Source of the DNA: Selaginella moellendorffii
Taxonomy: Eukaryota; Plantae; Lycopodiophyta
Reading direction: 5' to 3'
Assembly: GCF_000143415.4 (NCBI RefSeq)
Contig: NW_003314283.1
Coordinates: 320,752-384,751, forward strand
DNA length: 64,000 nucleotides
Shown in pieces: positions 7,728 through 60,813 of this stretch (position 1 is its first letter; the number at the start of each line of letters is the position of its first letter). The translations under genes were made by a program, and so were the position numbers. The notes beneath the pieces are model-generated. The model was not told the DNA's origin, made no database searches, and saw only the letters and a list, made by a program, of their open reading frames with translations.

Positions 7728-8978
7728 GACACCCAATCTCAATTGCTATGGACCCTTAGTCGGAAGGGTTGGCTTGGGTGCACTGCCAAGTGTGGGGGAT
7801 GCCCCTAAGGTCATGGTGAACAACTTAAAGGTTTAGAGGACTTAGTACCTATTAAAGTGCCAAAATTAGATTACTAGGTGATCTTATGGCTAAAACAAGG
7901 ACAAAGTCCTTATGAGGTTAAGGGATAAGGTTCCTAATTCAAAGTGTTGATTTGAACTATTGATGATGGTGTGGCTTGGTCAAGGTGACCAAGTGGGAGG
8001 GACACCCAAGGGAAATGAGTTGTGTCAATGCAATAACATAGTGAGTCCGAAGAAAATAGTCTCTATAAAAGACCCATGGAAGGGTCTCAAAATGGGGTTA
8101 TAAGTAAAGCCCATAACAGAAGATGCTAAAAAGACATACTAAGGGTGAACACCCTCTAGACTTGGCAAAGCAAAGTCTTTGCTATGGAACCGAAAGGATA
8201 CCTCGAGAATGGAGGTAGTGATCCAATGTTGCTGGGTGCAACAATCAAGGATAGGAACAAAAAACTAGTGTCTAAGAAAAGAGCCATGAGAATCATGGGA
8301 AAGAATCCAAAAGGCAAAGTTAGGCCAAGAACACTAATATGTTAGGTGCTAACGAATTGTGGGAAAGGCAATGTGTTTCCAAGGATGGATTCTCAATTGT
8401 TCTGATTTAGTGAAAGGGGAAGCTCCAAAGAAGGGAGCGGTAAGGTAGACAAATGATAGGGCCATGGACAGCCCTAGCACAAATCATGATAGCTGGAACT
8501 TAATGCCCAAAGTGGCACGAAATAGAAGAGAGGATGATAATGCCCTCAAGTAAAGAACTTCCTAGGAAGCGGAAATGGAGTTACACAATATTTGCAATGC
8601 AAGGTATCGAAGACACCTAGGAAATTGACTTCAAGAAGTCAAAAGTAAAAGTTCCAAAGTGCAAAGGTTATATTGATGGAAACTAAGATTACTTGAGAAG
8701 AAGTAGTGGGATTGAGATAAAGATGGTGTCTGTAATAGGTTTAGCAAGAACTAAACCAATAAAAGGAGAGAACCACCACAAATGGTCCAATCAGTCTCTA
8801 AGTTGGAGAGACTATCCTTCTTAGAGGATGGGCAAGGCATGGTGAGCTTTCGATATCAAACCATTGACGAATATTAGCGAAGGGCCAAGGATGGAAAGGG
8901 TAATATAAGTTGGTATTACTTTATAAAATAGTTTATCATTCGATGAGGACATCAAACTTCGTCTATGGGTGGTGGAGT

Positions 8979-30665: not shown

Positions 30666-30861
30666 AGCGGCGATCCTCCTGGCACTCCACCGAATCGATC
30701 CAATCCATCGCTCGCTGGCCTCGATCGCGCATCGACCAGATCGAGGATCGCAAGAACAAGTTAAAATAAATGCTAGCCCTAAAGCCCCATATCTACCTTT
30801 TTGCTTTATTAGCCCTAAGAGCACTTCTTTATTACTTTATTACTTTGTTAGTTAATGAGCT

Positions 30862-43023: not shown

Positions 43024-46000
43024 CTTAGGATGCCCACAAACATGGGGAATAGCCTTCCCCAACAACTCTCTTCTAGTCCCCACCAAGTCCCTTTTTGTCC
43101 ATGGCTGTGTTTGCCAACACTGCCACTAGATCAAGGCCTGCAGGCTCAACCTCTAAGTCCCACTAGCCTTTGGGACTTTCTCACCATGTGACCGTATCCT
43201 TGGTCACTGCACTAAAGGACTGCTCCTCTCCCCTTTCACCATTTCGGACTTTGGGACAATATTTCGGAACACCGTGGCCTTATGCAAGCCTCATGGGTAC
43301 TCTCCCCACCTCCTGCCTTTTGGTGCTCTAGCCATGGGCTTAGAGCAAGGTTCTATTGAACCACACCAGGTATCCAAGTAGGTAGTGCCACCCATACTTG
43401 GACTAGGAGCATCGGCCAGTCGATCTCCTAGGGGAACTAGAGCCGGCTCTTGAACACTTCACCAAGCTACCCCGCTTGTCAGTCCGTATTCACTCTAGTC
43501 TTGGACTTCCCAGTGGGCAGCTCATCACCCAACATTGGGTACAGCCTTCCAAGGCCAAACTGGCCTTTCCTGGCCAAACTGGCTCCACTGCAGTCCTCCC
43601 CTTTACTATACTTTTGGAGCTCACCAGACCCCCCAGGGTCTGGGAGACGAACGCTTTGGGCTTTCACCCTCTCAGACTCGAACTCAGACTCAGACTCAGA
43701 CTCGGACTTGGACTTGGACTCGGGCTTGGGCTCGGTCTCGGCCTCGGCCTTGGTCTCAGTCTTGGTCCCGGTCTCGGTCTCGGTCCCGGTCTCAGTCTTG
43801 GTCTCGGTCTTGACTTCAGACTCCATCTCGGGTCCATCTCGGGTCCATCTCGGACTCCATCTCGGACTCCATCTCGGGTCCATCTCAGACTCCATCTCGG
43901 ACTCCATCTCGTGTCCATCTCGGGTCCATCTCAGACTCCATCTCAGGTCTATCTCGGACTCAATCTCGGATCCATCTCGGACTCCATCTCGGGTCCATCT
44001 CGGACTCCATCTCGGATCCATCTTGGACTCAATCTTAGATCCATCTCGGACTCCATCTCGGGTCCACCTCGGACTCCAACTCGGGTCCATCTCGGACTCC
44101 ACTTCGGACTCCAACTCGGGTCCATCTCAGACTCCACTTTGGACTCCAACTCGGGTCCATCTCGGACACTTCCACGTGTCATATGTTGGTCCTTCTGGGT
44201 CCCTTTTTGGAGCCTCGCTTATTGCTCGCTTCGTGCTCATTCCTTGAGCACTTTGTTGGGAGTTCCACTCCCGCTCTCGACCTTTCAAGTCAGAGCTTTT
44301 AGTCCAAACGTGTTACGCTCGTTTGGTTTTCGCTTCGGCCACCACCACATGGCACCCTTCTGGCTCCACTTTGGGGCCTAGGGATTTTGTGTCTCACAAC
44401 TCCACCACCCATAGACGAAGTTCGATGTCCTCATGAATAGTAAACCCTTTCATAAAGTAACACCCACACGTGTTACCATTTCCATCCTTGGCACTCAGCC
44501 AATATTTGTCTATGGTTTGACACCAAAGGCTCACCATGCTTTGTCCATCCTCTAAGGAGCATAGCCTCTCCAACTTAGAGGCTCATTCGACCACTTGTGC
44601 TGGTTCTCTCCTTTTATTGGTTTATTTCTCACTAAACTTGTTAGAGACACCTTCTCTAACTCGATCACACTACTCATTCTTGAGTGGTCTCACTTTCCAT
44701 CGATATATCCCTTGCACTTTGGAACTTTTAATTCTGATTTCTCGAAATCAATTTCCTGGGTGTCTCTGACACCTTGCATTGCACATATTGTGCAATTCCA
44801 CTTCCTCATCCTAGGAAGTTCTCTACTTGAGGGCACCATCATCCTTTGTTTGATTTCATGCCACCTTTGGCACTAAGTTCCAGTTATCATATTTTGTGCT
44901 AGGGCTGTCCATGGCCCTATCATTTGGCTACCTTATTGCTCCCACCCTTAGAGCTTCTACTTTCGCCAAATCGGAGCAATAGGGAATCCATCCTTGGGAA
45001 CACATTGCCTTTCTGACAATCCGTTAGCACCTAACACCTTAGTGTTCTTGGCTTAGCTTTGCCATTTGGATTCTTTCTCATGATTCCCATGGCTCTTTGC
45101 TTAGCCACAGTCTTTTGCTCCTATCCTTGATTGTTGCACCTAGCAACATAGGATCGTTACCTTCATTTTCGAGGTATCCCTTTGGTTCCATAGCAAAGAC
45201 TCTTCTTTGCCAAGTCTGAAGGATGTTCACCCCTAGTATGTCTTTTTAGCATCTTTTGCTATGGGCTCTATCCACGGCCCAACTTCGTGACCCTCCCATG
45301 GGTCTCTTATAGAGACTACTTTCCTCAAACTCACTATGCCATCGCATGGACACAACTTATTTCCCTTAGGTTCTCTTCCCACTTGGTCATTTTTACCAAG
45401 TCACACCATCTTAAATAATTCAAATCAACATTTTGAACCAGGAACTTCATTCTTTAGCCAACCAAGGACCTTGTCCTTATTTGGCCATAAGATCACTTAG
45501 TGATCTCACCTTGGCACCTTAACAGAGTTGCCAAAAGGTACTTGGTCTTCTAGACCTTCAAGTTGTTGACCATAACCCCGGGGGCATCCCCCACACTTGG
45601 CGGTGCACTCAAGCTAGCCCTTACGGCCAAGGGTCCATAGCAATTGAGATTAGGTGTCCCCATCTCACTCACCACATCTTTGGTGCCACTTGCACCAAAG
45701 CGTTCAAGTTAAATATGCCGAGCTTTCACACTAAGCAATCTAACCGTGCATCACGACTCCGAGGCATCCCTCGCTTGGCGGTGTGCCCAAACCAATCTCC
45801 CCACTGAGAGTCCATGACCACCGAAATATGAGTGTCCTCATATTCCAAACCATCACTACGCCCTAGTGATTTGGGACTCGAACCCAAGCACTAGAGGGTC
45901 GGGACTCGAACCCAACCTCCATATATGCATCTACGGACGGCATCACACAAGATGCCTGGCGTGACTCCCCACGCCGGTGCACCAACTTATATTTAAAGCG

Positions 46001-46188
46001 CACTACAGATCACAGCTTAGGAATCTAGTTCCTCCGCACTGCCAAGTCCTCTCACTTGACAAGCCTGTGATCATGTATGGACTCCTCCATGCTCAGCTCC
46101 ATGGGCCACCCCTTTGAAGTTGGCTCCTTCAACTAGGGTATTCATTCCCCCCGACTTGCTAATCTCACTTAGCAAGTCATCTGGCCAC

Positions 46189-46212
46189 AAGCTCTATTTC
46201 GTTAAAGTGGGA
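46189..46212 (+). repeat. Left TIR AAGCTCTATTTCGTTAAAGTGGGA
   Basis: Exact reverse complement of 58567-58590. Confidence 0.97.
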
Positions 46213-46630
46213 ATTGTCATTATCCCACTTGTAAAATAAGGTTTCTAAACCTTTATATAGTATATAAATATAACAAAATTCAACTGCATTGAGGCACATG
46301 CCATTTTATTTTAAACAAGGAAATGTCTACTCAATCACTTCTCCTCCCTCTGCCACTGCTTCACCTCTCTCTTCTCCTTGTCATCGTCGTCCAATTTCTT
46401 TCCATCCTTTTAATATTGGCTCAGTTGCTCCGAGTCTAGGTGGAGCCCAAGTCCCCATTCAATCTTTACTTTCCCCTTATTAATAAAACAACTTCGTAGA
46501 CTTCCAATAACATGCTGTAACACTTCTAGTATAATGCAAATCCTCTCAAAGAATTGTCTTTTAATATTAATACAATGGCATGGAACCCCATGCCATAATA
46601 AGTTACATTTTTAAATAAATACATGCCATC

Positions 46631-49600
46631 TCAGACTGTTATTTTTTGCCTCCAACGCCTATACAATAATCTTGGAATTTCATCACTCTCCACACTATCA
46701 GGATTTAAACCCAATAGTAATGCCATCTCTTCTCTAATACGTCCACGCTCATGTTCAATGGTCGAAGAACCCATCCGGTTGAGCAGATTATGGAGATGCG
46801 GATAGTGCTTGGCTAGACAATATACATGCCATAAATGATGACTGGTGTCTGTCCGATCAAATGGCTTCTGATATACCGTTCCATCTGCCATTTGGTTGAT
46901 TTCTGCAGCCACCTCCTGGACTGGCCGGTTCTCTATCACCATCGCTTCAAGCCGTTTTGCAAGGTCCCCCAGAACATACGGTTTCTTCTCCCTAGTTTCC
47001 ATATTGCAAGAGATGGGGTGCACTGCATATGTGTGCGTGTTCGCTGCAGTTTTAATCGGCGAGTCATCGATGATGAGGATTTCACTTGACCTAGCAGTCT
47101 GGTTCATCACTACAGCCTCTGGCTTGACGAAGATGGGCTTGCTACCCCTCACATGGACCATAGTCAAGCAATTCTCCTGCGTTAGGAGAAAGTCAAATGG
47201 TAATATTACTCGCGTCTGATCGTGCATCATCTGTAGCAACGTTAATGCATTGTGGCGCATCATGGATGTCCAAACTCCCAATTGCAAATTGAACCCGGCC
47301 CTCTGTTTTAAGTGTCGCATGGTCATTATTAGATCCCGCAGTTTCTCCCGTGTGATTAATGTGAATCTGTCTCTTTTGACCAACTTGCGACCGCAGGCTT
47401 TGGAGGGTGCAATGACATTCGAGGACGAGCCACGCTCATGGGAGAAAAGGACACCGTTCAGATCAAAAACGATACAGTACTTTCGCCGTGACTCTGAAAT
47501 GAAATGCGTCAGCATAAAAAATGGTACAAGTCAATTTTACCATCTACAATATTAGCGAATGGTGCTCCCGATGGTCGTTCAGAGGGTTTTGGTCGAGGAA
47601 ACGTGAAGGGCGGAAATACTCTCCTCTGCAATGTGGGGTCAATCGCATCCGATGGCGTGTGGGCACATGCCATAACAGCTGTAGACTCTGGTACAACTGG
47701 CTCAACAGTGGTATGGGGTGGTTCCGATGGCGTGTGATCACACGCCATTTCAGCTGGTGCCTCCGTTGGCAAAGTGGACATGACTGAACAGGCAGCAGGG
47801 GCGGTGTAGGGAGGTTCCAACGGCGCGTAGTCAGATGATTGGGCACACGTTGAGTCCGTTGGAAATGAGGATACGACCGGCTCGGCGGCTGGGGCGGCCT
47901 CATACGGGTCCAATGGTGCCTGGTCACCGTATCCAACTGGTCAGTTGGATACGTGGACAAGATTGACTCAGTGGTATGGGTAGCATCAAGTGGAGCGTGG
48001 TCAGCTTGCTTGGCGTTGATATGGATAGTAGCCTCCACCAGCTCTGATGACTCTTGCAGGCAAGTAGAGTCCACTGGCAGATCCATATGCATGTCCAAAT
48101 ATCTCCCTTCGATTGAGATGGTATCCTCCCTACTGGCTACTAAAAACAAACTCATTAGCACATTGAATCGACTATACTGTATTTACCATCAACTGCTATT
48201 GGGTGCATTGCTGATTCTGAAGGATTGGACATACGTTTCCACCCTTGCTTGGCACTATCCTTCCTCGACACTAAAGGCTAGAGTTTGTATCTTAATTCAA
48301 CTGAATAATCTCTACTTACCATTTCTTCTGCGACCTACATGGACAATGTTAGAAATGGTAAAAGGTTAGGAATGGATGTACTATTATTTACCTGATGGTT
48401 TGTCTTGTATGACCTTCCTCCGCTGCTCTTTGGCCACCTTAGGCTGGCCATCGTCGTCATCATCGTCGTCGTCGTTATTGTGATCGTCACCATTGTGAGG
48501 ACCATCCAAGTCCTCTTCGTCCTCCTCTTCTTCGTCCTCCTCTTCGTCCTTCTGCTCTTCCTGCTCATTATCTTTCTCTGGCTCCTCATCCCCCTCCTGC
48601 ATTTCTTCCATAGGCTGCTCAGGCTGGATGGCTTGTTTTTCCAGGACCATCTTGGGAAAATCATCTGGCCGAGTCTCCATCTCAAAATACAAGACATCCA
48701 TAGCCTGTTTCAGTGCTTGACCTAGGACCGTATCCTCACCCGACTGTCTTAACATGGTTTCTGCACGTTCTTGCACCCTTCGAAGACGACGAGATGAGAA
48801 AAACTTGGCCCTAACTTGAAAAGCATCCCTCATCCATTGTACCTCTCCATTGAGATTGGGGAAGGGGAGTCCGCCATAGGAATCTGAGTCAGGAGGTGGT
48901 GACTGGCTCCTTTCACTCAGCCCTTGATCTGCAATGAATGGCATGAGCACACACGCCATAACCGCGAGGCATTACCTATCATCTTTTGGTTGCCCTTCTT
49001 CCTTTTTGAATCAAACGCCTCTGATCCCGACGACTGTCCAACGTGCTTTCGCTTTTTATGACTACTGTCAGTTTGAGCTTGGCTGGTGCTTGCCTGTTTT
49101 GCCTTTGAAGAAGTGTCTCCTGCAAGGAATGGCATGAGACCACACGCCATTGCAAATATAATTTGTACCTCCTTTTTTCCTATTGCTAGCCGGCGGTCGA
49201 CATCCCTCTTAATGAAATTTGGATACTGATCCAACTTCTCAGCTTTACTTTTCGTGGCATCCCGCAGCAGATCGATGAACTTGGGGGCCCCCTTCACGTA
49301 CTCGTCGATGTCTTCATTTGACAAGTCCAGCTCTTCCATCATCTCTTGCGTGGTGTCGATGCTCACCCTCTCCACGGCCACTTGCTCGAAGATCCAATCC
49401 TTCAATAGCGCACGAGCTCTCAGAGTCATGCACAAGTCCTCGTATGTCACAATATGGCCGGGAGTCATTTTGGTCTTGTTGAAGACTACCTCACCACGTA
49501 GAAGAGCATTAGCCACTGTCAGAAGGTCGTCGTCGTCTAGAGACCGCGAGAAACGCAAGGCGTTGAGCTTCAAATCATTGGGCTTCCGGCCGTCCTCCAC

Positions 49601-51219
49601 ACCCATTGAGTTTAGCAACTCCCCGTCATGGTACCTCCTCAGCACATCTACCCATTTGTCAAAAACAACTTTTGTCGCGAGTAGAATGTTATGGATGCTG
49701 AGTGTGTCATTGACCCCCAGTGTTTTCGAGAGAAGACTCGAGAATTCCTGCAATGGAAATGGCGTGAGGCCACATGCTATGCCACATGCAACGAGGCTTA
49801 CCTGCCAGGCGCTAGTTGCTAGTGCACGTCCTTGTCCTGGTTTTTGTGGCTTCTTCAGTTGAACCCAGAGCTTCTGTGTTCGTGCCAATGTCTCGTGCAG
49901 ACCCGATTTGTAGCACGTTTCTTGCTTGACATTCTGCGCGTGGGAGATGGATATGATAGATCGGAGGGGCGAGTTGCCTTTTATCAGGCGGACAACTCTT
50001 GTCTTGAAGACTTTCTTCACCTCCTCGCCCACCATAATATCCAGAACTATCTCTTGCATCGCCAAGCTAGAATGCTGCCCGAAGACGGCATAGAACCGGA
50101 TGTTCTGATCGTCCAACACCTTCCTATTGATCAAGTTTGGAAACCTCGTCTCGCCCTTCATTGTTTGGTAGTAGGGGATCACGTCTGCGATGTCGGGTGT
50201 TACTGGACTTGCCAGCATCTTCTGCTTCAGTTTCTCCACCCACTCATCAGATACTAGCCTGTGGTTGTATTTGCTTTGGATGTCGATACGGCTCACGTCG
50301 ATTGTATATACTTTGTTGGAATAGTAACAAGTACTATTATCTGCGACGATTTTTGCTGCCTCTTCTTGCTCTTTCTGCTCTTTGCGGCTCTTCTTTTTGG
50401 TGGGTGTAGTGTTCGAACCCGAGGCAATGGCATCACCGAGTAGCTTCTTTTTTGGAGCAGCAGAGTCGGACGTCGGCTTGAGCTTGACCACCCTTTTCTC
50501 CTTCAGGGTAGTTTCCAGATCGACCCCCTTCCCCTTCGCTTCGCGAACTGGAGGCACTCTCAACGGCTCAATGTTGGAATATAGTTTTTGATCGCCGTAG
50601 GTGAGGTCCGTGGATTCCATGTGATCTTCATAGACCCGCAGCGTCTTTGAAATTGTGGGCCTCCTGGACAACCTCTCCCTAGCTCCCTCTAGGAATTCCT
50701 CATAGCCGCTGCCCCCCTCCGGGAAGCCGCTAGGATGTGCAAGGTGGATCTTGAAGGCGGACGCTGTCTCTACCACAAGTGCCAGTCCATATTCTTGCAT
50801 GGAACTGCATGGAGTGTCTGTCACTTGGATGAGGATCCCCATGCATTCTTTTCTCCCACCATCTGTGTTGTACAGCATCAGATCCTCGCCTTCCATCCCG
50901 AAAGTCCAACTGGTGAGCTCCTCCCCCTTCTCTGCATCCACATTGACAGTGGCTGGAAGAAGAACGCAATTCCTCGCCTGTTCAGAAATGCACAACAATT
51001 AGAGCTGACAGATGAAAAACTAGCAGTTGGAAATAACGTGAGGCCACACACCATTCACCATTGCATCAGATGTCTTGAGGCTGCATCCTAAGATGGCGTG
51101 AGGCTACACGCCATCTGTAACCGAACTGCACTCGAGAGCCCAATCGGTGCATGCCAATGTTGCTACTGAATGGCATGTGGCCTCATGCCATTTTCTACTT
51201 GGCCTAAAAGACTTACCAT
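46631..51219 (-). CDS. Transposon cargo gene: ParB/Srx-like domain + acidic tract + Pro/Thr repeats + FCP1-like HAD phosphatase domain (multi-exon, probably damaged in this copy)
   Basis: GT-AG introns at 50978-51216, 49748-49801, 48929-48975, 48335-48391, 48271-48319, 48140-48186 and 47494-47540 join the 693-, 191-, 205-, 134- and 294-aa ORFs. Motifs FYAVFGQHSSLA, VFDLNGVL and IIDDSPIK. Apparent frameshift near 47925. Confidence 0.72.
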
Positions 51220-51434
51220 TTGAAGCCGAATGGAGGCCGTGACAATCGAGGCCGGACTCGCTGGCGAATGTGCACTGTGTGTGCAGCGGATCGTAGCAGC
51301 AAGGCTACTCTGCCACTTACAGTTGGAGAGTGGCGCTGAAATCTCCCGGGACGCCAAGTGGGCTGCGTGTGGGTGGCGGAGTGGGCGGCGGAGTTGGCGG
51401 CGAAGTTACAAACTGGGTGTGTCTTGAAGTGGAC

Positions 51435-51610
51435 GCCGATGCACACGAGCGCGATGCGAGCGCGAGTGTGATGCAAGCGTGAGTGGACGCCGATGCACAC
51501 GAGAAACCTGTAGAGAAGTGAGCGTGATCGCGAGTGGGAGCGCGATGCGAGCGGGAGCGCGAGTGTGATGTGAGTGCGAGCACGAGTGTGATGCGAGCGC
51601 GAGTACGAAG
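51435..51610. repeat. GC-rich degenerate tandem repeat (GATGCGAGCGCGAGTGT-like) upstream of the cargo gene
   Basis: Directly visible. Confidence 0.7.
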
Positions 51611-52819
51611 CAAAATGCAAAACCTAACCTCACACGCGCGAAATGTCACAACGGTTGGTAATCCCGCCACGTCATCATTCCTCGGACTTGGGCGCCACCA
51701 TTAATTTCTAGATTGCCGCGTGCATGCAAGCACGCAAAATCCAAAAGAAATCCGCAACGTCATCATTCCTCGGACTACATGCACGCGAAATCCAAAAGAA
51801 AGATCATGATTGGGATATCATTTAATACCCTCGCTATATTTATACCATGCATGATTGGATATTCCAAAGCATCTTGTATTTCCAAAAATGGCAGATGTTC
51901 AGCTAAATAAAGAAATTCTATCTGTTTCTATTTTTCTCTCAAATCAATATTATAGCGTGTGGGCTCATGCAATTTTGAACTAAAGAAACCCAAAAAACGT
52001 TGGACCCAAAATATTTTGAAAAAACCCAAAAAACCCTAAACATTTTAAACCCAAAAATCCAGGCGTCCTGTGGCGTTATTCCTTGAATGGCGTGTGGGCG
52101 CATGCCATTTTCAGGGCCAAATGCTGAATGGAGAAAAATTCCCTTTCAGTGCAAATGCTGCAAGAGGCAGATGCCGAGCACAAAGGACTGTAATTACCTC
52201 ACATGACACAGATAAACTTTTCTCTATTTGGCAAAGATAAACTTTATAGCGTGTGGGCTCATGCAATTTTGAACCCAAAAAATGCACCCAAAAATTCTCG
52301 GCGTCATCTGGCGTTATCTCTTGAATGGCGTGGGGCCGCATGCCATTTTCAGGGGCACATAGGAGTATATTCCTAGGATATTCTAACATGCGTGAGATTT
52401 TTTTGAGTTTTCTGGAGATCCAACCGTTAGATCGCAACTAGATTTTACAGAATGGTATACAATGTCTTTCTTGATGACCCTGCAAAGAAGCATCTCGATC
52501 GGACACCACATGAAACCACACGAGCCTTACAATGTTTCAGGGGCATTTGCCATAGATCCGACCGTTATTTTGCTCCAAGATTTTACAGTTTGGTGTGCAT
52601 TGACCTTTCCATCGACACTGCAAAGGGACATCACAATCAGATGCGGGATCACAAGAAACTAACTTCACTAACTCTGGTTTCACCAAGATCTACGTAAGGA
52701 GTTATGAAATGAAAGGACCCTCTCTATTGAAATGTGTTTATGGTCCTAAGGGCATTGTGACATATCAAAGGATTTTGCATCAAGTTCTGTATTTGCATGT
52801 TTATCAAACTACTGAATTG

Positions 52820-52846
52820 CTAAACCCTAAACCCTAAACCCTAAAC
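52820..52846 (+). repeat. Interstitial plant telomere repeat (CCCTAAA)x3-4 / telo-box cluster
   Basis: CTAAACCCTAAACCCTAAACCCTAAAC. Confidence 0.85.
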
Positions 52847-53705
52847 ATGTGGCAAATGCTGCGTGAAGAAAGATGCCCTTTCTGGGCAAATGCTGTAAGA
52901 GGCAGATGCCGAGCAGATGTATTTCAGGCTAGCGAAGGGGACAAACGAAAGCTAGCTATAAACATGACGGGATGCAAATAGATTACTAGGCTGGTCCTGC
53001 GAAAATCAAAAACCATAATTGAAAACATTGAAAATGCAAAAAGAAAGGTTTATAATATTTTTGAATTTTAAGCAACCAAAGGAATGTGAGTAAGGCATGT
53101 GTTTGTAAGTTTAAAAATGCCTCAACCACTTAAATTCCCAAGTAAATAAAACTGTTTCTATTTTTGGTACAGGTAAACTTTATAGCGTGTGGGCTCATGC
53201 AATTTTGAACTCAAAAATGCACCAAAAAATGCTCGACTAGCATTATTCTTTGAATGGCGTGTGGCCTTATATTGCCATAAATGGACGTACACACACAGCA
53301 TAATTATTCCTTTACACGGCGAATAATCTTGGCGCGGATCGCTGACATGGCATGGCAAAGTTCGAATCACTGACATGGCACAGCTGGATCGAGGCAAGGA
53401 CATGATGTGACAAAGTTCAACCTCCGACAGCAAAGTCTAGAAGCTACTCAGTTTGAAATTTGTCAGAGGAGTCATAAAATCTAGTTTGTCAGAGGATTTG
53501 ATGTGACGTTCAAGCGTGTGTTATTTTTGAATTCTCGAACTCATTCCTAGGTCTATCATTTTTGTGCGCCGTGTTCTTGGTTCCGCTGAGCGCAGTGAGC
53601 GCTGCTTGTGTAAGCGGCGTTGTGAGCTGTGGTTTATGCGTCTACGAGCGGTTGCGGCATTGTGAGCGACATTGCGGGTGGCAGTTTATGCGAGTGGCAA
53701 TTTGT

Positions 53706-53777
53706 GCGAGCGGCGCTATGAGCAGTTGCGGTGTTGCGAGCGGCACTACGAGTAGTTGCGGTGTTGCGAGCGGCACT
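53706..53777 (+). repeat. 30-bp tandem repeat, about 2.4 copies
   Basis: Unit GCGAGCGGCACTACGAGTAGTTGCGGTGTT. Confidence 0.75.
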
Positions 53778-53981
53778 GTCTTTGGTGTGGCTACCGCTTC
53801 CTCTTGATATTCGGCACTTGTGCTTCCTGGTATGTTCACCATGGAATGGCTTAGGACCACATTTAGAAATGGCATGAGGCCACATGCCATCTTGGGCCCT
53901 TGCAATTTCATGGCTAGCGTATTGTCATGTATGTTTTTACTTGCCTGCAGCTGTGTGTATATCAAGATGGCATGTCATGCC

Positions 53982-54133
53982 ATCTTTGGCCCCTGCTAGC
54001 CTATTGCCATATTCCTTTTGCCTTGCTGCAACTGTATATATTTTTGTATGGGTGACTAGTCACGCACACAAAAATATATACAGTTGCAACAAGGCAAAAG
54101 GAATATAGCAACAGGCTAGCAGGGGCCAAAGAT
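53982..54133. repeat. 152-bp loopless inverted repeat
   Basis: 76-bp arms centred on GTGACT|AGTCAC with about 5 mismatches. Confidence 0.92.
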
Positions 54134-54341
54134 AGCGTGAGGCCTCATGCCATTAGTGGTACCACTAATGGCATGAGGGCTCATGCCAATTTTGTGAATG
54201 CAAAATTTCACGTGGGTGTCAATAGCATGTTTGAATAATGGCATGTGGCCTCATGCTATTGAGGTTGTTTGGTATGTTATGATTTAGGCCATTCTCCAAT
54301 CATTTTTTGTATGGTCTTAACTTCTTTTTTGCACTTTCAGA

Positions 54342-57300
54342 ATGGCCTTCAGGGTTGGGGAAAAGGTTTATATTTTGAATGGTGGGAAGAGAGTTGCAAA
54401 AGGGACCCTTGTGTCTATGGATCGGAACTTTGTTATACACTGTCAAAGGCTTGGGGAAGGCAATGCTGCTGTATCAGTAGAGACTGTCTTCGATGGGAAT
54501 GTGGTCGCTATTGAACGAGGAGAGATGGTCGTCGGGGTAAATGTTGTTGTTGCCTTGAAAAATCTTCAGAAGAAAGCAGATGTTGGGGACAGCGCAAGTG
54601 CGACGCATGTTCCCTCCGTGGATCTTAAGAACCGTGCTACATGGATTCAGGCGAAGGTGTTTCTAAACAACCCCGAGGGGGAGGTGGTAGCTGAGGGCTT
54701 AGCCACAGTTGTCGATCCAAGAGATGCGGTTGCTAATCAAGAATTGGGCTGGGATGATATTGGAATTGTGATTTTAGAGGTTGTTGACACAGAAGAAAAC
54801 AGTCTGACTATTGGAAGCATTGTGCGGTGGAAATTGAGGCACTTAGTGTTTGAGAATGTGAAGGATTCACAATCAAACACCACTACAACTGATGACAGAA
54901 CATCTCTTCATGGGAAAAGAAAGTACACCTTCCTAAAGCGCAGCCAAAGGGATCTGAGCAACGAACCGAAAAGGCAGAAAATGGCGATGGAGGTTCGAAT
55001 GGTCTCGACAGTTGTTTGTTGCAAGAGGAGGTGTTGTCAACATGCTGATTGGGATGTTATTGAAGAGGAGAGAGCAAGATACAAGACATTGTCCTGGAAG
55101 GCAGCTCGCAATTTTGTGTATGAGGCATTACGGTCATCTGTTGATGCTTCAGAACATCAGGTGGGGGGCATGGTCTTCCATAGGGGTTTGGTCTGCATGA
55201 AGGCATGGAGAATCATTTATGGAGTCCCTCGAACCACATTCTACAGAATCAAAACTGAGTTCGAGGAACAAAGGGTTCAACAAGCAGTCCATGGGAACGA
55301 CGGTACGCACAAAACCAGGGGTCATGTTGTATATGGAGAGGCAATCTTCAAGAGGTTTGTCGAGACATGTAGCGAGTAGCAACCACATAAAACCCGCCTC
55401 TTGGAAGATGGAACACGAGACACCCAACGAGTTCTCCCTTCCATGTATACCAAGGGGGCCATATTGGAAGATGTGAATCGGGAACTCCAGAGTAATGGCT
55501 ACAGGAAGCTGAGCCAATCTAGATTTAGTAGATTGTGGAGCAACAGGTTCAGGGATGTGAGTATAGGAAAGTACTCCAGCTTTTCAAAGTGTGACGAGTG
55601 CACTGCTATCAAAATGGCTTTGTCGAAGAATTCTTGCAGCGCTCAAGAGCGAAAGACGTTGGTTAGAAGGCGGCTCGACCACAACATCGAGCAGAGAAGC
55701 TGCAGGACTGCATATTATCATAACAGGATTCTCTCCATAGAGAGACCTGACTCTTACCTCTGCATCATCCACGACAAAATGGACCAGAAAAAGACGTGCT
55801 TACCTCGACTCAATCCTGCCCCCAAGGCAATCTCTTCATCCATGCAGCTGCCTGTGTCTCTGTTTGGCATAATCGCTCATGGGCATGGTGCCCAGAACTA
55901 TGGGAACTTCTTTGTACCTCTATGGGGTGGCGGGGGTGCAAACATGATGATTGCGTCCCTAGCAAAACACTTAAGGTCTCTGCAAAGTGCGCAGACTGAG
56001 CTGAACGGCCAACCCTTGCATAAGGCCCTTGTCGATCGAACCCCATACAGGGTTCAGCTGGAGGAGGAGCAAAGGCTTGCAGTATCGCGTGGGGCCCCAT
56101 GCCATCCCAGTGAATATGTTAGCTGTCAGATTGTAGGGTTATCACGTGAGGCCTCATGCCATTCCGACAAGGCTGGTCGCCCGGTGAATGCACAGCCTCA
56201 TCCAAACAAAGCAGAATCTCAAGGAAGTTCTTGCGGCCGATGTGGCCTTCCACCCCATCTTCTGCTCCAAACAGACAATGCTGGCAGTGAGAACAAAAAC
56301 ATGTACGTCTTCGCGTACTTGGCGATGCTTGTTGCCAAAGGCATATTTGAAACGGTTACACTTGGCTTTCTCATGGTTGGGCACACTCATGAAGACGTCG
56401 ATGCCATGTTCAGTCACCTGGCAGAGTCCCTCCGGCGATCCAATGTCCTCACCCTCCCACAACTCTACGATGAATTCCAAAATTGCATCAAAGGCACTGT
56501 TGAAGCTGCACTTCTGACAGAGGTTCCAGACTTTAAGGGGTTTGTAAGAGGCTACATCAGGGACGGATCCGAAACGCTGATTGGCCACTCCAAGCCTCTT
56601 CAGTTTCATTTCAGCATGTGTGACGGTGCTCCAGTGATGAGGTACAAGATGAGAGAATGGGACACAGTGTGGCTGCCAGTGGACGGCATTGAACTCTTCA
56701 AGAGAGATCCCATAACTGGGGAACCTATGATGCCGATGCACCCGGATGGACTCAAAGACCAGGAAAGTATAGTGGCCGGGATTAGACAGCATATTGCCTT
56801 CTGGAAGAGGGGGTTGGTGTTTGGTGGAGAATCCTATTTTCAGAGGTGCAAGCCTTTGCTCGAATACTGGGAGAAGATTATATCTGCTATCCAAAATGGG
56901 CCGGTTGTATATGAAGAATTGGAAGAGTCCTTTTGGCCAGAACCCAGAGCACCAGATAGTAGCGGAACAATGTCCTCTGGAAATGCAGTGACAGATAACG
57001 ATGTTGAGGATCACTATTGTGGGCCGAGGAACAAGAAGCCGGATTCAGCATTCAATCCAGTACAGGTCTGCAAAGGAATGGTCGTGCTTGTCAGACCCAG
57101 TAATAAAAAACAAATGATATGGGTGGGGCGCTGCATCACTGATGCAGAGGAGGACGCGGAAACTAACTCCTTCAATGTAACTGTGGAGTGGTTCAAGCCA
57201 AGTTCCGGATATACGAAGGATTGCCTAGAAAAAAGATGGGTGCTAAATCCAAGGGATCCCAGCATGAGCATATCGGTGGATAATGTTGTGCATGGTTGGA

Positions 57301-57392
57301 TGCGGAAGCAGAGTGCCACCATCACCTTGCCAGACCATGCAAGAGATGTAGCAAGAGCATTCATAACCCGGGTTCAAGGTGAGATTCATTAA
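54342..57392 (+). CDS. DDE transposase (Sola1/DUF7869-like motifs), about 1016 codons with one in-frame TAG at 55377-55379
   Basis: The 345-aa and 663-aa ORFs share one frame. Motifs CCKRRCC, VCMKAWRIIYGV, FSKCDEC, IIHDKMDQ, LQTDNAGSENKN and FLMVGHTHEDVDAMFS. A possible last mini-exon extends to 57465. Confidence 0.88.
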
Positions 57393-57672
57393 TATTCCTT
57401 TACTAAGTTTGTAATGTATTTTATTTCAAGGTGAACAATCTGAATCTGAATCAGAGGAGGCGTGATGGCATGTGGCTTGAGATGATGTGACATATGCATT
57501 TACCAATCACATGTGCATAAATCTAATAATATGGCGTGTGGCCCATATTAATGGCACATAAACCCATATTGTGGGCTTACGTGCTTTATGTACCATCATT
57601 CCCTTGCAGCGTGTGTGTTGGTTTCCTTTTATAACACAACGAACTCCATAGTTTAGGGTGAAGAGCGTTCTC

Positions 57673-57930
57673 ATGGCAAGCACAAAATCTGTAAGTGAGG
57701 CAGAAAAGGAGACGGAGAAGGAGATAGGTGAAGATGTAGAATATATAAGTCTTCCAAACTCCCCGTACTATACTCCAGGTGATCATTTTTCTGAACAAAC
57801 GGCAACATTAACAACTATCGAGAACGCCCCAGTAACGTCAGAGACAACAATCCAAAGCAAAACAACTGACCCGGAGAAGGATGATAGTACCGCTGAGAGT
57901 ACCAAAAAGGAGGTGTCCACTAGCGCTTAG
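57673..57930 (+). CDS. Small acidic Ser/Thr-rich ORF inside the transposon
   Basis: 85-aa ATG-initiated ORF with protein-like disordered composition; no motif recognised. Confidence 0.3.
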   Translation: MASTKSVSEAEKETEKEIGEDVEYISLPNSPYYTPGDHFSEQTATLTTIENAPVTSETTIQSKTTDPEKDDSTAESTKKEVSTSA

Positions 57931-58566
57931 GCTTATAATGGCGTGTGCCCTCATGCCATTTACTTGATCACCAAATACCTTTTTCCCTTTGCACTAGTAT
58001 ATCTTAATACCGGTCTGAGAAATAGAATGGCATGTGCCCTCAGGCCTTTTACTAAATCACCTTTGAAAGAAATGCAAGCCTTTATGTCGTAAAAAAAAGG
58101 TACTAGAGAAATTCCTTAATAATATGAATGTTATTTAGTTTCATGAAAATACACTAAGGGTCAAATGAGTTAAATGACTTCTCCAGACTAGCAATGCCTC
58201 TTGCTACACCTTCACAATTAGATTCGTTAGAAAAAGATAACATTGAATAATATCTAAATGTTCTCACCATTAAGTTATATGTCTGGCTAATAGGAATGAC
58301 GTTCATCTTGGAAAGCTCACCACACGCTCAATGAACAAACAAATAGTGTGTGCGCGCATGCCATCGCTCTTCTTTAGCTTCAGATTCGGCTTGTTCACCT
58401 TGACAATGAGATTTATTATACAACCAGATGGACTCAGTCTGGACACAAAGTCACCGCGCTAGTCACCATGCCCCAGATATGTCTAGCCCCTGGACAAAAA
58501 ACATATAATTTCACGTCATTTTCAAATACTTGAAAATTTGTACCTAGTCCCATTTTACTGAATAAA

Positions 58567-58590
58567 TCCCACTTTAACGAAATAGAGCTT
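58567..58590 (-). repeat. Right TIR
   Basis: TCCCACTTTAACGAAATAGAGCTT followed by CCAC. Confidence 0.97.
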
Positions 58591-60813
58591 CCACCGTAAT
58601 ATGGTTCATGCATAAACATGAAAGTCCTTAACCATCGACTTTCGTTCAAAGCCCTCTCTTTGAACACTCAGAAACTACTTCCCTAATCTTGCTAGCCTCG
58701 CCTCATGGCAAACTTCAAGACCACGCTTCTGCTGCACCACTCTGATTTCGCGCGTTCTATGAACCATTTACACTTGGTTGACTAGATACTTATCTACCTA
58801 GGGGAACGTTCAAGGAACTCTGTTCCTTAACTTACTAAGGTCTCTCCTTTCGCAAGCTTTCCAATTACCATATAGTTTAACATGGACAATCCCATGCTTT
58901 AGACTCTCCATGGCATCCCGGCCGCTAGTAACAACATGCTTGAGCACCCACTTGATTCTCCACTCTCAATTTGCATAACCACCCTTAGTCATGTCTGTCA
59001 ATTCCTATGGTTCAATTCTATCCTTATATTACTTGCTTTTTGGCTTTATACATTTCCTTCGGTTATTCTCCTCCAAACTAGGAAGGTAGCTTTGCACTTT
59101 CTACCATGCCTTGGCAAGTATTCATAGGGATGAACCTACCTGACAGCTTAGGGAGTGTTTCCTCAATTTGGGTATACTCACTTTGTAATCCCACATACTA
59201 GGATTACCGTTGCTACTTATGGGCCTTTATATGCCCATCACTAGCCTTGCCAAAATCCCTCTTTGGCTTTGTCCAATTTGGGTAGATGGACTTCTCCCAT
59301 CTCCACAACCTTGGACATTTGGATAGCACCTCCTATCTTTCATTCACTAAAGACTTTGTCCCTTGGGCATTATCGATTGCCCTCATGACACTAAACACCA
59401 CCTTCTGGTGTTCTAGAGTGTTTGAGTGTCCCAATGATGGCCTGTTTAGCAATGAGTATTCCCTTTACAACATTGACTTACTATCTCACAACATATCTAA
59501 CTTCTTTATCCCAATAAAAAGTTTTAGGTAGTTACCTTCTACCAGTTTAACTAATTATTTTGCACCTTTTGCTTAGTTGCCTCATAGTTGTCAAGTCCTC
59601 CAACTCATTGCTGGTGCTTCCACACCTCTATCATTATCTGTGTCACCACACTCTAACCGCATGCCTTCCAACTTAGGCTATATTATTCCCATTTCCATTG
59701 GGATTCCTTTGGAAGGGGTTCTTATAAACCTGCCAATTTGACCTCGAGGCAGCACGCCTTGGCACATTCAGTGTCTCCATACCATTGGCTCCACGAGCCT
59801 ACCTTTATGACATTTCTTACTTGTGTTTAGGTCTTTTTGCAAAGACCAATATGATTGTCTCTTATACCAATTATCCATTAGCACTGCACCATAGAGTTCA
59901 CACACAACTTTGCGTCAAAGTTGTTTTCTTCTAGGAAACTCCTTCCCACGACTTTAGCATGGCACCTTCTGCCATCAATGAGATACACACGGTTCTCATG
60001 CTTGGATCTCAAGATCCTCCCCATTCTTCGTGGGGCACCACACACCTCAGTCCAAATGCTTCCATCAATCCCTCAGGATTATTCCTTGACTCTATTAGAG
60101 TCATCAGACTTTTTGGACTTTGCTAATCCGATGACCCATGAGGTCCTACTTTTGAGGTACCAACTCACTAGAATACAACTCCTTATATTCATGTCCTACT
60201 CACAAGGACCATCTTTGCAAGTGTTACTCCAACACTTTATTTGTTCTTTAAGGGCAACCTTTTGCCCCTTATGACCACTTGTCCACATGATGAGAATACC
60301 AATTCATCCTCTAAGTACACCCCCAACTCCTTGGGTTGTTCCAACATTTATTCAAGGTAGCCCCGGCTACTATTTCAAGGACTTGTGTCCTCTTCCATAT
60401 TTGACCTCCCACGGTCATCAATTCCGGTCTCAAATTTATGAACACCAGCCTCACTATATGAGGGTAATCTTGTGACTCCTTTATTGTTTTGGAGTCTCTA
60501 TCTTTTCCGTGATCCCAACTATAGTTGTTTACCACAACTACATTAGCGTAAGTTTGCTAAATCAAATGTTCATTTGGATCACGTCCTCAACTCTCCGAGG
60601 AAAACCTTATACTATTCCCAAGATCCCAAAGTCGTTCCATTATTGGCCCCTTTCTATCCACCATATTGCGCACAAGTTCATGCATGAACTTGAGTGGAGA
60701 GCTATGTCCTCTCGACATGCTACTCCTCGAGAATAGGTCCATACCTAGGACCTTCCAATTCTAATACAAGTGGTGATATACTTGAGCACCAATAAGAGTC
60801 GGACTAAGGAACA

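What the first reader, a model, noticed from the sequence alone, without database searches (positions are those of the whole stretch)
46189..58590. Giant Sola-like transposon with a divergent cargo gene and its own cis-repeat system
Seen: 12,402 bp, perfect 24-bp TIRs, a 4-bp TSD, a transposase on +, a roughly 1,400-codon spliced gene on -, a 3.1-kb repeat-rich spacer and about 24 private palindromes. Established: Sola elements make 4-bp TSDs and are usually described with a transposase only. The DN...NKN and GH....D motifs match my recollection of Sola1, whose TSDs are typically AWWT, unlike CCAC here. Inference: an undescribed two-gene lineage whose accessory protein acts on the element's own sites. 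This is the best candidate for a new system in this window.
Basis: partly seen in the sequence, partly recalled or inferred. Interest (0 to 1): 0.92.

Follow-up and report, generated by a model that had tools for sequence, protein, structure and literature searches.

The report
Giant Sola1 transposon with ParB-like partner
This is a real 12.4-kb Sola1-type DNA transposon of an early-diverging land plant. Besides its transposase it carries a gene for a ParB-like DNA-binding protein and about two dozen copies of a private 22-bp palindrome; a similar design was first reported in algae in 2025 and is seen here in a new form.

Summary
The element spans 46189-58590 and has perfect 24-bp TIRs and a 4-bp TSD (CCAC). 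A paralogous empty site in the same window confirms the insertion. A second, internally deleted copy in another assembly ends at exactly the same terminus.

The + strand gene is a roughly 1,010-codon transposase. It hits Pfam DUF7869, and its D / DN..ENKN / GHTHxDxD motifs fit the published Sola1 core. This copy carries one in-frame TAG.

The - strand gene (about 1,300 codons, 47-54-nt introns) encodes a ParB/Srx-fold protein (AF2 plus Foldseek) with a C-terminal NIF/FCP-like phosphatase-like domain. A homologous, divergently placed ParB-like gene sits beside related transposases in Riccia.

The palindrome ATGGCRTG-N6-CAYGCCAT occurs 22 times inside the element and once elsewhere in the window. 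Two copies form the core of mini-introns. Related loci in Riccia, Ceratodon and Calypogeia each carry a different private palindrome.

A giant Sola1 with an opposite-strand ParB-methyltransferase gene was published for Ectocarpus in 2025.

What looks new here:
- the land-plant host;
- the swapped effector domain;
- the dispersed, lineage-specific palindromes.

Binding of the palindromes by the ParB-like protein is inferred, not shown.

The parts
46185..46188 (.). Left copy of the 4-bp target-site duplication, CCAC
   Evidence: The paralogous empty site at about 3838-3860 has a single CCAC.
46189..46212 (+). Left terminal inverted repeat (24 bp perfect; 27 nt with one mismatch)
46634..47493 (-). 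Last exon of the accessory gene: NIF/FCP1-SCP-like (HAD) phosphatase-like domain. Motif I reads DLNGV, with the second Asp replaced by Asn; IIDDSP is present.
   Evidence: Pfam PF03031 E=6e-6, 26.5 bits against a cut-off of 21.8. No homologues by word search. The single-sequence AF2 model failed at pLDDT 35.
47494..47540 (-). 47-nt canonical intron (GTAAAA...TTTCAG) without a palindrome; joins the P-rich exon to the NIF exon in frame
47541..48139 (-). Exon with proline-rich peptide repeats. Palindromes 47652 and 47727 lie in frame here. The frame probably shifts (frame 2 to frame 1) near 47940.
   Evidence: repeat units continue in a different frame across about 47940.
48392..48928 (-). Acidic, low-complexity exon of the accessory gene
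48929..48975 (-). Intron B, 47 nt (GTAATG...ATTGCAG). Its core is palindrome 48938-48959. Removing it joins the 693-codon ORF to the next ORF in frame.
49120..49168 (-). Candidate intron C, 49 nt, with splice-like ends around palindrome 49129-49150. Removing it would shift the frame, so it may be retained.
49187..50326 (-). ParB/Srx-fold core of the accessory protein: N-terminal ParB-like domain plus a helical domain. The family motif F.AISGQHS..A sits where ParB has GERRxRA.
   Evidence: AF2 pLDDT 80, pTM 0.71. Foldseek: 37 of the top 38 PDB hits are ParB, Noc, KorB, PadC, sulfiredoxin or other ParB/Srx-like folds, best E 1.9e-3, probability 1.0. Alignment A3.
49748..49801 (-). Intron A, 54 nt (CAG|GTAAGC...CATTGCAG|G), made almost entirely of palindrome 49759-49780. 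Relatives have an intron at the same position.
   Evidence: Its removal matches the annotated Selaginella protein P0076. It coincides with the AF2 low-confidence segment. The Calypogeia intron at this position holds 4 palindromes.
46634..50896 (-). Accessory ('cargo') gene as a whole, about 1,300 codons, from the first ATG of the 693-codon ORF to the stop
   Evidence: The gene model is inferred from splice signals and homology; there are no RNA data.
50999..54341 (.). Spacer of about 3.3 kb between the divergent genes. It holds GC-rich tandem repeats (51357-51608) and repeated units of about 240-290 bp carrying two palindrome variants. It also holds a telomere-like (CCCTAAA)n run (52820-52846) and a 166-bp hairpin (53975-54140).
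54342..57392 (+). Transposase gene, about 1,010 codons in one frame
   Evidence: About 40% identical relatives of 1,054-1,074 aa. Alignment A4.
55377..55379 (+). In-frame TAG that breaks the transposase in this copy
   Evidence: The second copy L001 has CAG here and reads through.
55773..56402 (+). Catalytic core. D125 (IIHDKMDQ), D292 (DN..ENKN) and GHTHxD332xD334 are invariant in relatives. The Pfam DUF7869 match covers 56244-56657.
   Evidence: Pfam E=1.8e-42. Invariant columns. Pattern matches Sola1-1_AP in the Majorek 2014 supplement.
46575..58364 (.). 22 copies of the palindrome ATGGCRTG-N6-CAYGCCAT at up to 2 mismatches. Starts: 46575, 47652, 47727, 48938, 49129, 49759, 51093, 51170, 51952, 52087, 52246, 52325, 53182, 53869, 54132, 54168, 54238, 56084, 56141, 57938, 58027, 58343. 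Weaker copies: 46283, 51033, 53967.
   Evidence: The R/Y positions are CpG or its TpG/CpA decay products.
58567..58590 (-). Right terminal inverted repeat
   Evidence: Similarity to the second copy L001 ends exactly at 58590.
58591..58594 (.). Right copy of the TSD, CCAC

Best explanation
Shown: this is a Sola1-type cut-and-paste DNA transposon of 12.4 kb that inserted into an older repeat and made a 4-bp duplication.

It carries two divergently transcribed genes around a repeat-rich promoter spacer:
- a DDD-type transposase (Pfam DUF7869);
- an accessory protein of about 1,300 aa whose core has the ParB/Noc/KorB fold and whose C-terminus is an FCP1/SCP (NIF)-like phosphatase-like domain.

This copy is slightly decayed, with one nonsense codon in the transposase and a probable frameshift in the accessory gene. 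It would therefore depend on intact copies elsewhere.

Inferred mechanism: dimers of the ParB-like protein recognise the element's private 22-bp palindromes, much as ParB, Noc and KorB recognise parS, NBS and OB sites. These sites are seeded through promoters, introns, variable coding linkers and both subterminal regions. Binding would mark the whole element as self. It would then deliver the C-terminal effector (phosphatase-like here, methyltransferase-like in relatives) to the element's chromatin or transcription machinery. It might also compact the long element so that its distant ends can pair. Each lineage has its own palindrome, as expected if protein specificity and sites co-evolve.
For: Element and mobility; empty site; second copy.

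Transposase family:
- DUF7869 at E=1.8e-42.
- 75 relatives, including Riccia, Ceratodon and Ectocarpus.
- Invariant D125, D292, D332 and D334.
- Motif pattern equals the Sola1-1_AP core and differs from Sola2-1_HM and Sola3-1_HM.

Accessory protein:
- AF2 pLDDT 80.
- Foldseek top hits almost exclusively of the ParB/Srx fold: Noc, ParB-parS, KorB, pNOB8 ParB, PadC, sulfiredoxin.
- NIF Pfam hit above the gathering cut-off.

Conserved architecture: Riccia L003 has a homologous gene divergent from its transposase. Riccia L007 has one about 10 kb upstream on the opposite strand.

Palindromes:
- 22 of 23 window matches lie inside the element, against 0.06 expected.
- Different private palindromes occur in Riccia (25 copies), Ceratodon (9 and at least 11 copies) and Calypogeia (14 copies).
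- The Calypogeia copies lie beside a ParB-like gene with no transposase within 10 kb.
- Palindromes occupy the same intron of the ParB-like gene in the window and in Calypogeia; in Riccia one overlaps the end of the upstream exon ORF at the same junction.

Literature: the same kind of accessory gene and the same hypothesis appear for Ectocarpus Sola1-1_Ec32 and for red-algal Plavaka.
Against: - No binding data exist.
- Foldseek E-values are modest (best 1.9e-3, TM 0.3-0.5), and no sequence-level match to ParB families was found.
- The ParB CTP-binding arginines (GERRxRA) are replaced by GQHS, so a CTP-clamp mechanism is doubtful.
- Ceratodon loci L004 and L008 have palindrome arrays but no detectable ParB-like gene within 10 kb.
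- ParB-like loci L005 and L011 have no repeated palindrome.
- The NIF assignment rests on one Pfam hit. The second catalytic Asp is Asn, there are no homologues, and the fold prediction failed.
- The gene model has no RNA support.
- Sola1 placement is by motif comparison and indirect literature, not by phylogeny against Repbase.
Confidence: 0.55

Rival explanations
1. The palindromes are binding sites for the transposase itself, serving as subterminal or internal enhancer sites for transpososome assembly, like the motifs of En/Spm or Ac. On this view the ParB-like protein does something unrelated to them.
For: - Ceratodon loci L004 and L008 carry arrays of private palindromes immediately flanking the transposase gene, with no ParB-like gene detected within 10 kb.
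- In the window, palindromes lie within about 250-390 bp of both ends.
- The transposase has a Cys-rich N-terminal region that could bind DNA.
Against: - In the window and in Riccia the sites are spread over the whole element rather than concentrated at the ends.
- The TIR shares no half-site with the palindrome.
- Calypogeia L006 has 14 palindromes around a ParB-like gene with no transposase within 10 kb.
- Symmetric 20-22-bp palindromes are the classic target of dimeric HTH proteins such as ParB, Noc and KorB (established knowledge).
Confidence: 0.22
2. The palindromes act as RNA hairpins in the element's transcripts (splicing control of mini-introns, small-RNA precursors, transcript stability). 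Alternatively, they are self-spreading mini-palindromes that are merely tolerated in introns and variable linkers.
For: - Two palindromes form nearly the whole of canonical 47-54-nt introns, and a third has splice-like ends.
- Others sit in 5' and 3' untranslated regions, or in frame in hypervariable coding linkers.
Against: - All copies keep the same sequence rather than only the pairing, which points to sequence-specific recognition or recent copying, not structure alone.
- Many lie in the non-transcribed or promoter spacer.
- There is no Rfam family.
- Stems are only 8-9 bp.
- Other introns of the same gene (47494-47540, 48140-48186) lack them.
Confidence: 0.13
3. The C-terminal NIF-like module, and possibly the long acidic and P-rich linker, is a lineage-specific capture of host exons. 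It would have no role in the element's biology, and only the ParB-like part would belong to the conserved system.
For: - No NIF-like sequence was found in the Riccia accessory gene. Relatives carry an N6_N4-methyltransferase-like C-terminus instead.
- No homologues of the NIF exon were found.
- The catalytic motif is degenerate, DLNGV.
Against: - The exon is joined in frame by a canonical intron to the upstream exons, and its ORF is intact over 284 codons.
- Variable effector domains fused to ParB-like modules are the reported pattern in other transposons: methyltransferase in Ectocarpus, 2OG-oxygenase in Plavaka.
Confidence: 0.1

Closest known systems
Sola1-1_Ec32 of Ectocarpus (giant Sola1 transposon; Genome Biol 2025, PMC12477816)
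   Same: Both are Sola1-type transposases in an element longer than 10 kb. [quoted passage not shown] The published hypothesis is also the same: the protein binds and modifies its own transposon. An Ectocarpus DUF7869 protein is among the relatives of the window's transposase.
   Different: The Ectocarpus protein carries an N4C/N6A DNA-methyltransferase domain, whereas the window's has a NIF/FCP-like phosphatase-like domain. The host is a brown alga, whereas the window's relatives are bryophytes and lycophytes. That paper's text does not mention dispersed palindromes (0 occurrences of 'palindrom'). No direct sequence comparison with Sola1-1_Ec32 was possible.
Plavaka accessory gene PAG3 in the red alga Bostrychia (bioRxiv 10.1101/2025.02.11.637652)
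   Same: It has an N-terminal ParB-like domain fused to a variable effector. Arrays of inverted repeats lie next to the gene, and the authors propose self-binding.
   Different: It belongs to a different transposon superfamily (Plavaka/CACTA-like) and has a 2OG-oxygenase effector. Its repeats are described as tandem arrays adjacent to the gene, not as sites dispersed through introns, coding linkers and both ends.
Bacterial ParB-family site systems: ParB-parS, Noc-NBS, KorB-OB (RK2)
   Same: The fold of the accessory core matches. These systems also use many copies of one short palindrome spread over a replicon, some inside genes, each recognised by a dimer. KorB uses 12 such sites on RK2 to control transcription (established knowledge).
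   Different: There is no sequence-level similarity. The CTP-binding GERRxRA arginines are absent, replaced by GQHS. The setting is eukaryotic, with introns. The protein is fused to a phosphatase-like domain. No partner ATPase is present.
Two-component plant DNA transposons (En/Spm TnpA+TnpD; PIF/Harbinger ORF1+transposase)
   Same: Each has a second element-encoded DNA-binding protein and repeated cis motifs recognised by it (established knowledge).
   Different: The superfamilies and protein folds are unrelated. In those elements the motifs are subterminal, not element-wide.
Classical Sola1 elements (Bao et al. 2009; e.g. Sola1-1_AP)
   Same: They share a 4-bp TSD, TIRs, and a large transposase with the D / DNCGGQN.N / GHT motif pattern.
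   Different: Sola1 elements curated in bivalves average 5.4 kb (PMC10294476), whereas this one is 12.4 kb with a second gene.

Membership tests
Sola superfamily / Sola1 group | 4-bp target-site duplication | tested here: met
   CCAC lies on both sides. The paralogous empty site has a single CCAC and aligns without a gap across the junction.
Sola superfamily / Sola1 group | Terminal inverted repeats | tested here: met
   24 bp perfect, unique in the window. A second copy ends at the same base.
Sola superfamily / Sola1 group | Transposase with the Sola1-type RNase H-like core (D ... DNxxxQN.N ... GHT..) | tested here: met
   The window has IIHDKMDQ, QTDNAGSENKN and VGHTHEDVD, with D125, D292, D332 and D334 invariant. 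Sola1-1_AP has VFDLEK, SDNCGGQNRN and RGHTQS. Sola2-1_HM and Sola3-1_HM have different patterns (Majorek 2014 supplement). The comparison was made by eye at motif level only.
Sola superfamily / Sola1 group | Phylogenetic placement among Repbase Sola1, Sola2 and Sola3 transposases | not testable with these tools
   No Repbase access. Bao 2009 and Yuan & Wessler 2011 are not held. Indirect support: an Ectocarpus DUF7869 protein is a relative, and Ectocarpus has a curated Sola-1 family.
   The TSD here is CCAC. The second copy's right flank starts AAAG. Only one complete TSD is available.
ParB/Srx superfamily (accessory protein core) | ParB/Srx-fold N-terminal domain followed by a helical DNA-binding domain | tested here: met
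   AF2 pLDDT 80, pTM 0.71. In Foldseek, 37 of the top 38 PDB hits are Noc, ParB, KorB, pNOB8 ParB, PadC, sulfiredoxin or other ParB/Srx-like folds. Alignments of about 280-300 columns cover both domains of Noc and ParB. The E-values are modest (1.9e-3 at best).
ParB/Srx superfamily (accessory protein core) | Sequence-level membership (Pfam, NCBIfam or PDB profile match) | tested here: not met
   No significant hit in Pfam, NCBIfam or PDB sequences.
ParB/Srx superfamily (accessory protein core) | CTP-binding GERRxRA arginine motif of canonical ParB, Noc and KorB | tested here: not met
   The family consensus at the equivalent strand-helix position is F.AISGQHS..A, with no arginines.
ParB/Srx superfamily (accessory protein core) | Specific binding to a palindromic site | not testable with these tools
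   Only co-occurrence of ParB-like genes with private palindromes could be shown.
ParB-methyltransferase accessory proteins of giant algal transposons (Sola1-1_Ec32 type) | Encoded on the strand opposite the transposase within the element | tested here: met
   The same arrangement occurs in Riccia L003 and L007.
ParB-methyltransferase accessory proteins of giant algal transposons (Sola1-1_Ec32 type) | N4C/N6A DNA-methyltransferase domain | tested here: not met
   The window's protein matches the family profile only up to position 412 and has a NIF-like C-terminus instead. Relatives have a methyltransferase-like C-terminus: Pfam N6_N4_Mtase E=0.04 in Riccia, and a motif-I-like TRPGTCVIDINTGG in P0093, with no DPPY.
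FCP1/SCP (NIF) HAD-type phosphatases | Pfam NIF domain above the gathering score | tested here: met
   PF03031, E=6e-6, 26.5 bits against 21.8, model positions 1-126 of 160.
FCP1/SCP (NIF) HAD-type phosphatases | Catalytic DxDx(T/V) motif | tested here: not met
   The sequence reads FDLNGV, with the second Asp replaced by Asn. The downstream IIDDSP motif is present.
FCP1/SCP (NIF) HAD-type phosphatases | HAD fold | tested here: inconclusive
   The single-sequence AF2 model has pLDDT 35. There is no PDB sequence match and no homologues from which to build an alignment.

The most novel reading that the evidence does not exclude
Sola1-like transposons of early land plants each carry a private addressing system of the ParB/parS type. 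A ParB-fold protein co-evolves in specificity with a 20-22-bp palindrome seeded all over its own element, including the mini-introns of its own gene. That address is used to deliver interchangeable effector domains to the element's own chromatin or transcription machinery: methyltransferase-like in some lineages, an RNA-polymerase-II-CTD-phosphatase-like domain here. This would be transposon-encoded, self-targeted control of expression or silencing.
Probability: 0.3. Interest if true: 0.8.

Novelty: new variant of a known kind. Interest (0 to 1): 0.6.

Why it matters
ParB-domain accessory genes in giant eukaryotic transposons were reported only in 2025, in algae, and what they do is unknown.

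This locus and its bryophyte relatives supply what is needed for a direct test:
- a defined protein core with a confident predicted fold;
- a defined candidate site;
- several lineages whose palindromes differ, so specificity-swap experiments are possible.

The effector fused to the ParB-like module is also replaceable (phosphatase-like here, methyltransferase-like in relatives). That points to a modular way for transposons to manipulate their own chromatin or transcription. The mini-introns built around the palindrome are an unusual link between a cis-acting DNA site and gene structure.

Tried and rejected
Searches and predictions that led nowhere:
- Word-indexed homology searches of the 693-codon ORF and of the NIF exon found nothing. 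Only the exhaustive representative search found 13 weak relatives of the 693-codon ORF.
- PDB sequence searches of all three proteins, and a profile search of the ParB-like family, gave nothing meaningful.
- NCBIfam gave nothing for the ParB-like region.
- AF2 of the NIF exon without an alignment failed, so no fold search was run on it.
- The TIR was not found in JGI metagenome contigs.
- Rfam found no RNA family in 45000-60000.
- TIR/TSD boundaries of the related Riccia and Ceratodon elements could not be defined; only chance-level 11-bp pairs turned up.
- The Ectocarpus DUF7869 contig holds only the transposase.
- Bao et al. 2009 and Yuan & Wessler 2011 are not in the paper library.

Rejected readings:
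- One-off host gene capture for the ParB-like gene. It is conserved in position in Riccia.
- A genome-wide MITE as the origin of the palindromes. 22 of 23 copies lie inside the element, and their flanks are not conserved.
- Sola2 or Sola3 membership. The motif patterns differ.

Full report
**1. The observation**

The ends are as described. AAGCTCTATTTCGTTAAAGTGGGA lies at 46189-46212, and its exact reverse complement at 58567-58590. The repeat extends to 27 nt with one mismatch. No other copy exists in the 64-kb window. CCAC flanks both ends.

Three independent checks show that this is a real transposition product.
- A scan for inverted-repeat pairs with a 4-bp duplication around the transposase gene returns this pair alone.
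- The element sits inside an older repeat. When the two flanks are joined with one CCAC, they align over about 2 kb, without a gap at the junction, to a paralogue at 2860-4880. That paralogue has one CCAC at that point and so serves as an empty site.
- A contig from an unrelated public assembly (L001, Logan ERR10900155) is a second, internally deleted copy, 97.6-100% identical. Its similarity ends at precisely base 58590 and then continues into a different flank.

**2. The transposase**

54342-57392 is a single reading frame of about 1,010 codons interrupted by one TAG at 55377-55379. The second copy has CAG there and reads through, so the window's copy carries a nonsense mutation.

The C-terminal 663 codons hit Pfam DUF7869 at E=1.8e-42. 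There are 75 relatives. These include full-length proteins of 1,054-1,074 aa at about 40% identity and named proteins from the liverwort Riccia sorocarpa, the moss Ceratodon purpureus, an oyster, Chromera and Ectocarpus. In an alignment of eight relatives, D125 (IIHDKMDQ), D292 (DN..ENKN) and GHTHxD332xD334 are invariant.

The founding Sola papers are not in the library. However, the supplement of Majorek et al. 2014 prints the RNase H-like cores of reference elements:
- Sola1-1_AP has VFDLEK / SDNCGGQNRN / RGHTQS.
- Sola2-1_HM has GDFAENY / TDGCAGQYKN / TSHG.
- Sola3-1_HM has LKDYCQ / SDNASSYHGN / CRGKD.

The window fits the Sola1 pattern and not the other two. Together with the 4-bp TSD, this supports Sola1 membership at motif level. 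A phylogeny against Repbase could not be run.

**3. The minus-strand gene**

Six-frame reading and the DNA itself show a chain of ORFs joined by canonical GT...AG introns of only 47-54 nt: 49748-49801, 48929-48975, 48140-48186 and 47494-47540. Each join restores the frame. The total is about 1,300 codons, from the first ATG at 50896 to the stop at 46634. Near 47940 the peptide repeats continue in another frame, which suggests a frameshift in this copy. No RNA data are available, so the model is inferred.

The 693-codon ORF has no Pfam or PDB match and no word-indexed homologues. The exhaustive search found 13 weak relatives (best E=1.4e-7). They include hypothetical proteins of Selaginella moellendorffii and the liverwort Calypogeia fissa. 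Their alignment shows a conserved block ending in F.AISGQHS..A.

An AlphaFold2 model of residues 225-604 of the ORF, built on that alignment, is confident (pLDDT 80, pTM 0.71). In Foldseek against the PDB, 37 of its top 38 matches are ParB-superfamily structures: Noc, ParB-parS, KorB, pNOB8 ParB, PadC, sulfiredoxin and other ParB/Srx-like proteins. The E-values are modest (best 1.9e-3), but probabilities are near 1. The longer alignments span both the N-terminal domain and the helical DNA-binding domain. The arginines of the ParB CTP pocket are absent.

The last exon (46634-47493) hits Pfam NIF, the FCP1/SCP-type phosphatase family, above its gathering score (E=6e-6). It has IIDDSP, but its motif I is degenerate (DLNGV). 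It has no detectable homologues, and a single-sequence fold prediction failed.

**4. Is the second gene a one-off capture?**

No. Next to the Riccia transposase P0025 (locus L003), an annotated 675-aa gene lies about 4.6 kb upstream on the opposite strand. It matches the window's ParB-like core (tblastn E=3e-13; profile hits 1e-40 and below; FLAISGQHSSRAQQ). A second Riccia locus (L007) has a ParB-like ORF about 10 kb upstream, again on the opposite strand.

In relatives, the region downstream of the ParB-like core looks like a beta-class N6_N4 DNA methyltransferase without the DPPY motif:
- weak Pfam hit, E=0.04, in Riccia;
- a motif-I-like TRPGTCVIDINTGG in P0093.

The window lacks this region and has the NIF-like exon instead. 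So the ParB-like module is conserved and the effector is swapped.

**5. The palindromes**

ATGGCRTG-N6-CAYGCCAT occurs 23 times in the window at up to 2 mismatches, 22 of them inside the element, against 0.06 expected. Of 41 exact half-sites, 39 lie inside. The flanks are mostly unrelated, so the unit is the palindrome itself. The spacer also holds larger repeat units that carry two variants. The R/Y positions are CpG or its decay products, consistent with an ancestral ATGGCGTG half-site that erodes by cytosine deamination (inference).

The sites lie in these places:
- downstream of both stop codons;
- upstream of both genes;
- throughout the spacer;
- in frame in the hypervariable linker of the transposase;
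- in frame in the P-rich exon.

Most strikingly, they also form the core of introns. Intron A (54 nt) and intron B (47 nt) are little more than a donor, the palindrome and a TTGCAG acceptor. A third palindrome has the same ends but would shift the frame. Intron A corresponds to an intron position shared with relatives, to the gap in the annotated Selaginella protein, and to the low-confidence loop of the model.

The window's palindrome is absent from the four related loci fetched at that point (L001-L004), but relatives have their own:

| Locus | Palindrome | Copies |
|---|---|---|
| Riccia L003 | CTTCGGGACGCGTCCCGAAG | 25 over 15 kb |
| Ceratodon L004 | TTCAACTCGA-N-TCGAGTTGAA | 9, just upstream of the transposase |
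| Ceratodon L008 | ATTTAGCTCA-NNN-TGAGCTAAAT | at least 11 |
| Calypogeia L006 | GCCTCGAGA-NNN-TCTCGAGGC | 14 |

In Calypogeia, four copies lie in the intron that corresponds to intron A. In Riccia, one copy overlaps the end of the upstream exon ORF at the same junction.

The association is not perfect. L004 and L008 have palindromes but no ParB-like gene within 10 kb. L005, L009 and L011 have no repeated palindrome.

**6. Mechanism**

Shown: a mobile Sola1-type element, a conserved divergent ParB-fold accessory gene, and lineage-private palindromes.

Inferred: the ParB-like protein binds the palindromes as a dimer, as ParB, Noc and KorB bind their sites. Through them it addresses its effector domain to the element, or compacts the element.

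The main rival is that the transposase binds the palindromes, which the Ceratodon loci favour. A second rival is an RNA-level role, or selfish spread of the palindromes. All three are separable by simple binding assays and RNA-seq.

**7. Comparison with what is known**

The Ectocarpus transposon survey (PMC12477816) describes a 21.5-kb Sola1-1_Ec32. Its opposite-strand gene encodes a 1,104-aa protein with a ParB-like domain and an N4C/N6A methyltransferase domain. [quoted passage not shown] A Bostrychia preprint describes a Plavaka accessory protein with a ParB N-terminus, a 2OG-oxygenase domain and adjacent inverted-repeat arrays.

The following were not found in that literature:
- occurrence in land-plant lineages;
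- a phosphatase-like effector;
- element-wide, lineage-specific palindromes, including palindrome mini-introns.

I class the finding as a new variant of a known kind.

**8. Verdict**

Identity as a two-gene Sola1-type element is well supported (about 0.85). The ParB-palindrome mechanism is plausible but untested (about 0.45). Interest is 0.6.

Noticed in passing
window 2860-4880; 45189-46188 plus 58595-59594; 1-454; 7728-8186: The transposon is inserted into an older repeat family that has at least two long copies (82.5% identical) and two fragments in the window. The copy at 2860-4880 serves as an empty site.
   Followed up: partly
window 930, 6600, 40461, 43155, 61309: A second, unrelated palindrome family, AAGTCCCAC-N6-(A/T)TGGGACTT, has five copies outside the Sola element (0.06 expected). 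It probably belongs to another repeat family.
   Followed up: partly
window 3616-3637 and 45956-45977: A near-palindrome, (A/C)TGGCGTGACTC(A/C)(T/C)CACGCCGG, with conserved flanks occurs in both copies of the host repeat. It resembles the Sola palindrome by chance or by shared half-site, and accounts for the single 'outside' match.
   Followed up: no
window 52820-52846: A short plant-type telomere-like repeat, (CCCTAAA) x 3.9, lies inside the element's intergenic spacer.
   Followed up: no
window 53975-54140: A 166-bp hairpin (83-nt arms, 92% complementary, no loop) lies just upstream of the transposase start. It is bracketed by copies of the 22-bp palindrome and followed by a TAGTGGTACCACTA palindrome.
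   Followed up: partly
window 29484-30824 (-): A 447-codon ORF carries a Myb/SANT-like DNA-binding domain (Pfam Myb_DNA-bind_4, E=1.4e-17). It could be a trihelix-type host gene or the ORF1 of a Harbinger-like element.
   Followed up: no
window 47494-47540, 48140-48186, 48929-48975, 49748-49801: All inferred introns of the accessory gene are 47-54 nt. This suggests a host with very short introns; Selaginella-like lycophytes come to mind, but the host was not identified.
   Followed up: partly
L005 10001-11425 (Selaginella moellendorffii GL377575.1): A relative of the accessory protein that starts after the ParB-like N-terminal block sits among ordinary host genes (ArfGap, VQ, SCAR), with no transposase and no palindromes. 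It may be a domesticated or relic copy.
   Followed up: partly
L007 2227-7855 and 14499-18220 (Riccia sorocarpa): This locus holds three different palindrome families: TTGGCACG.., ATGTTGGAACG.., and the L003-type CTTCGGGA... It also has two adjacent DUF7869 gene fragments, which suggests nested or tandem elements of different sublineages.
   Followed up: no
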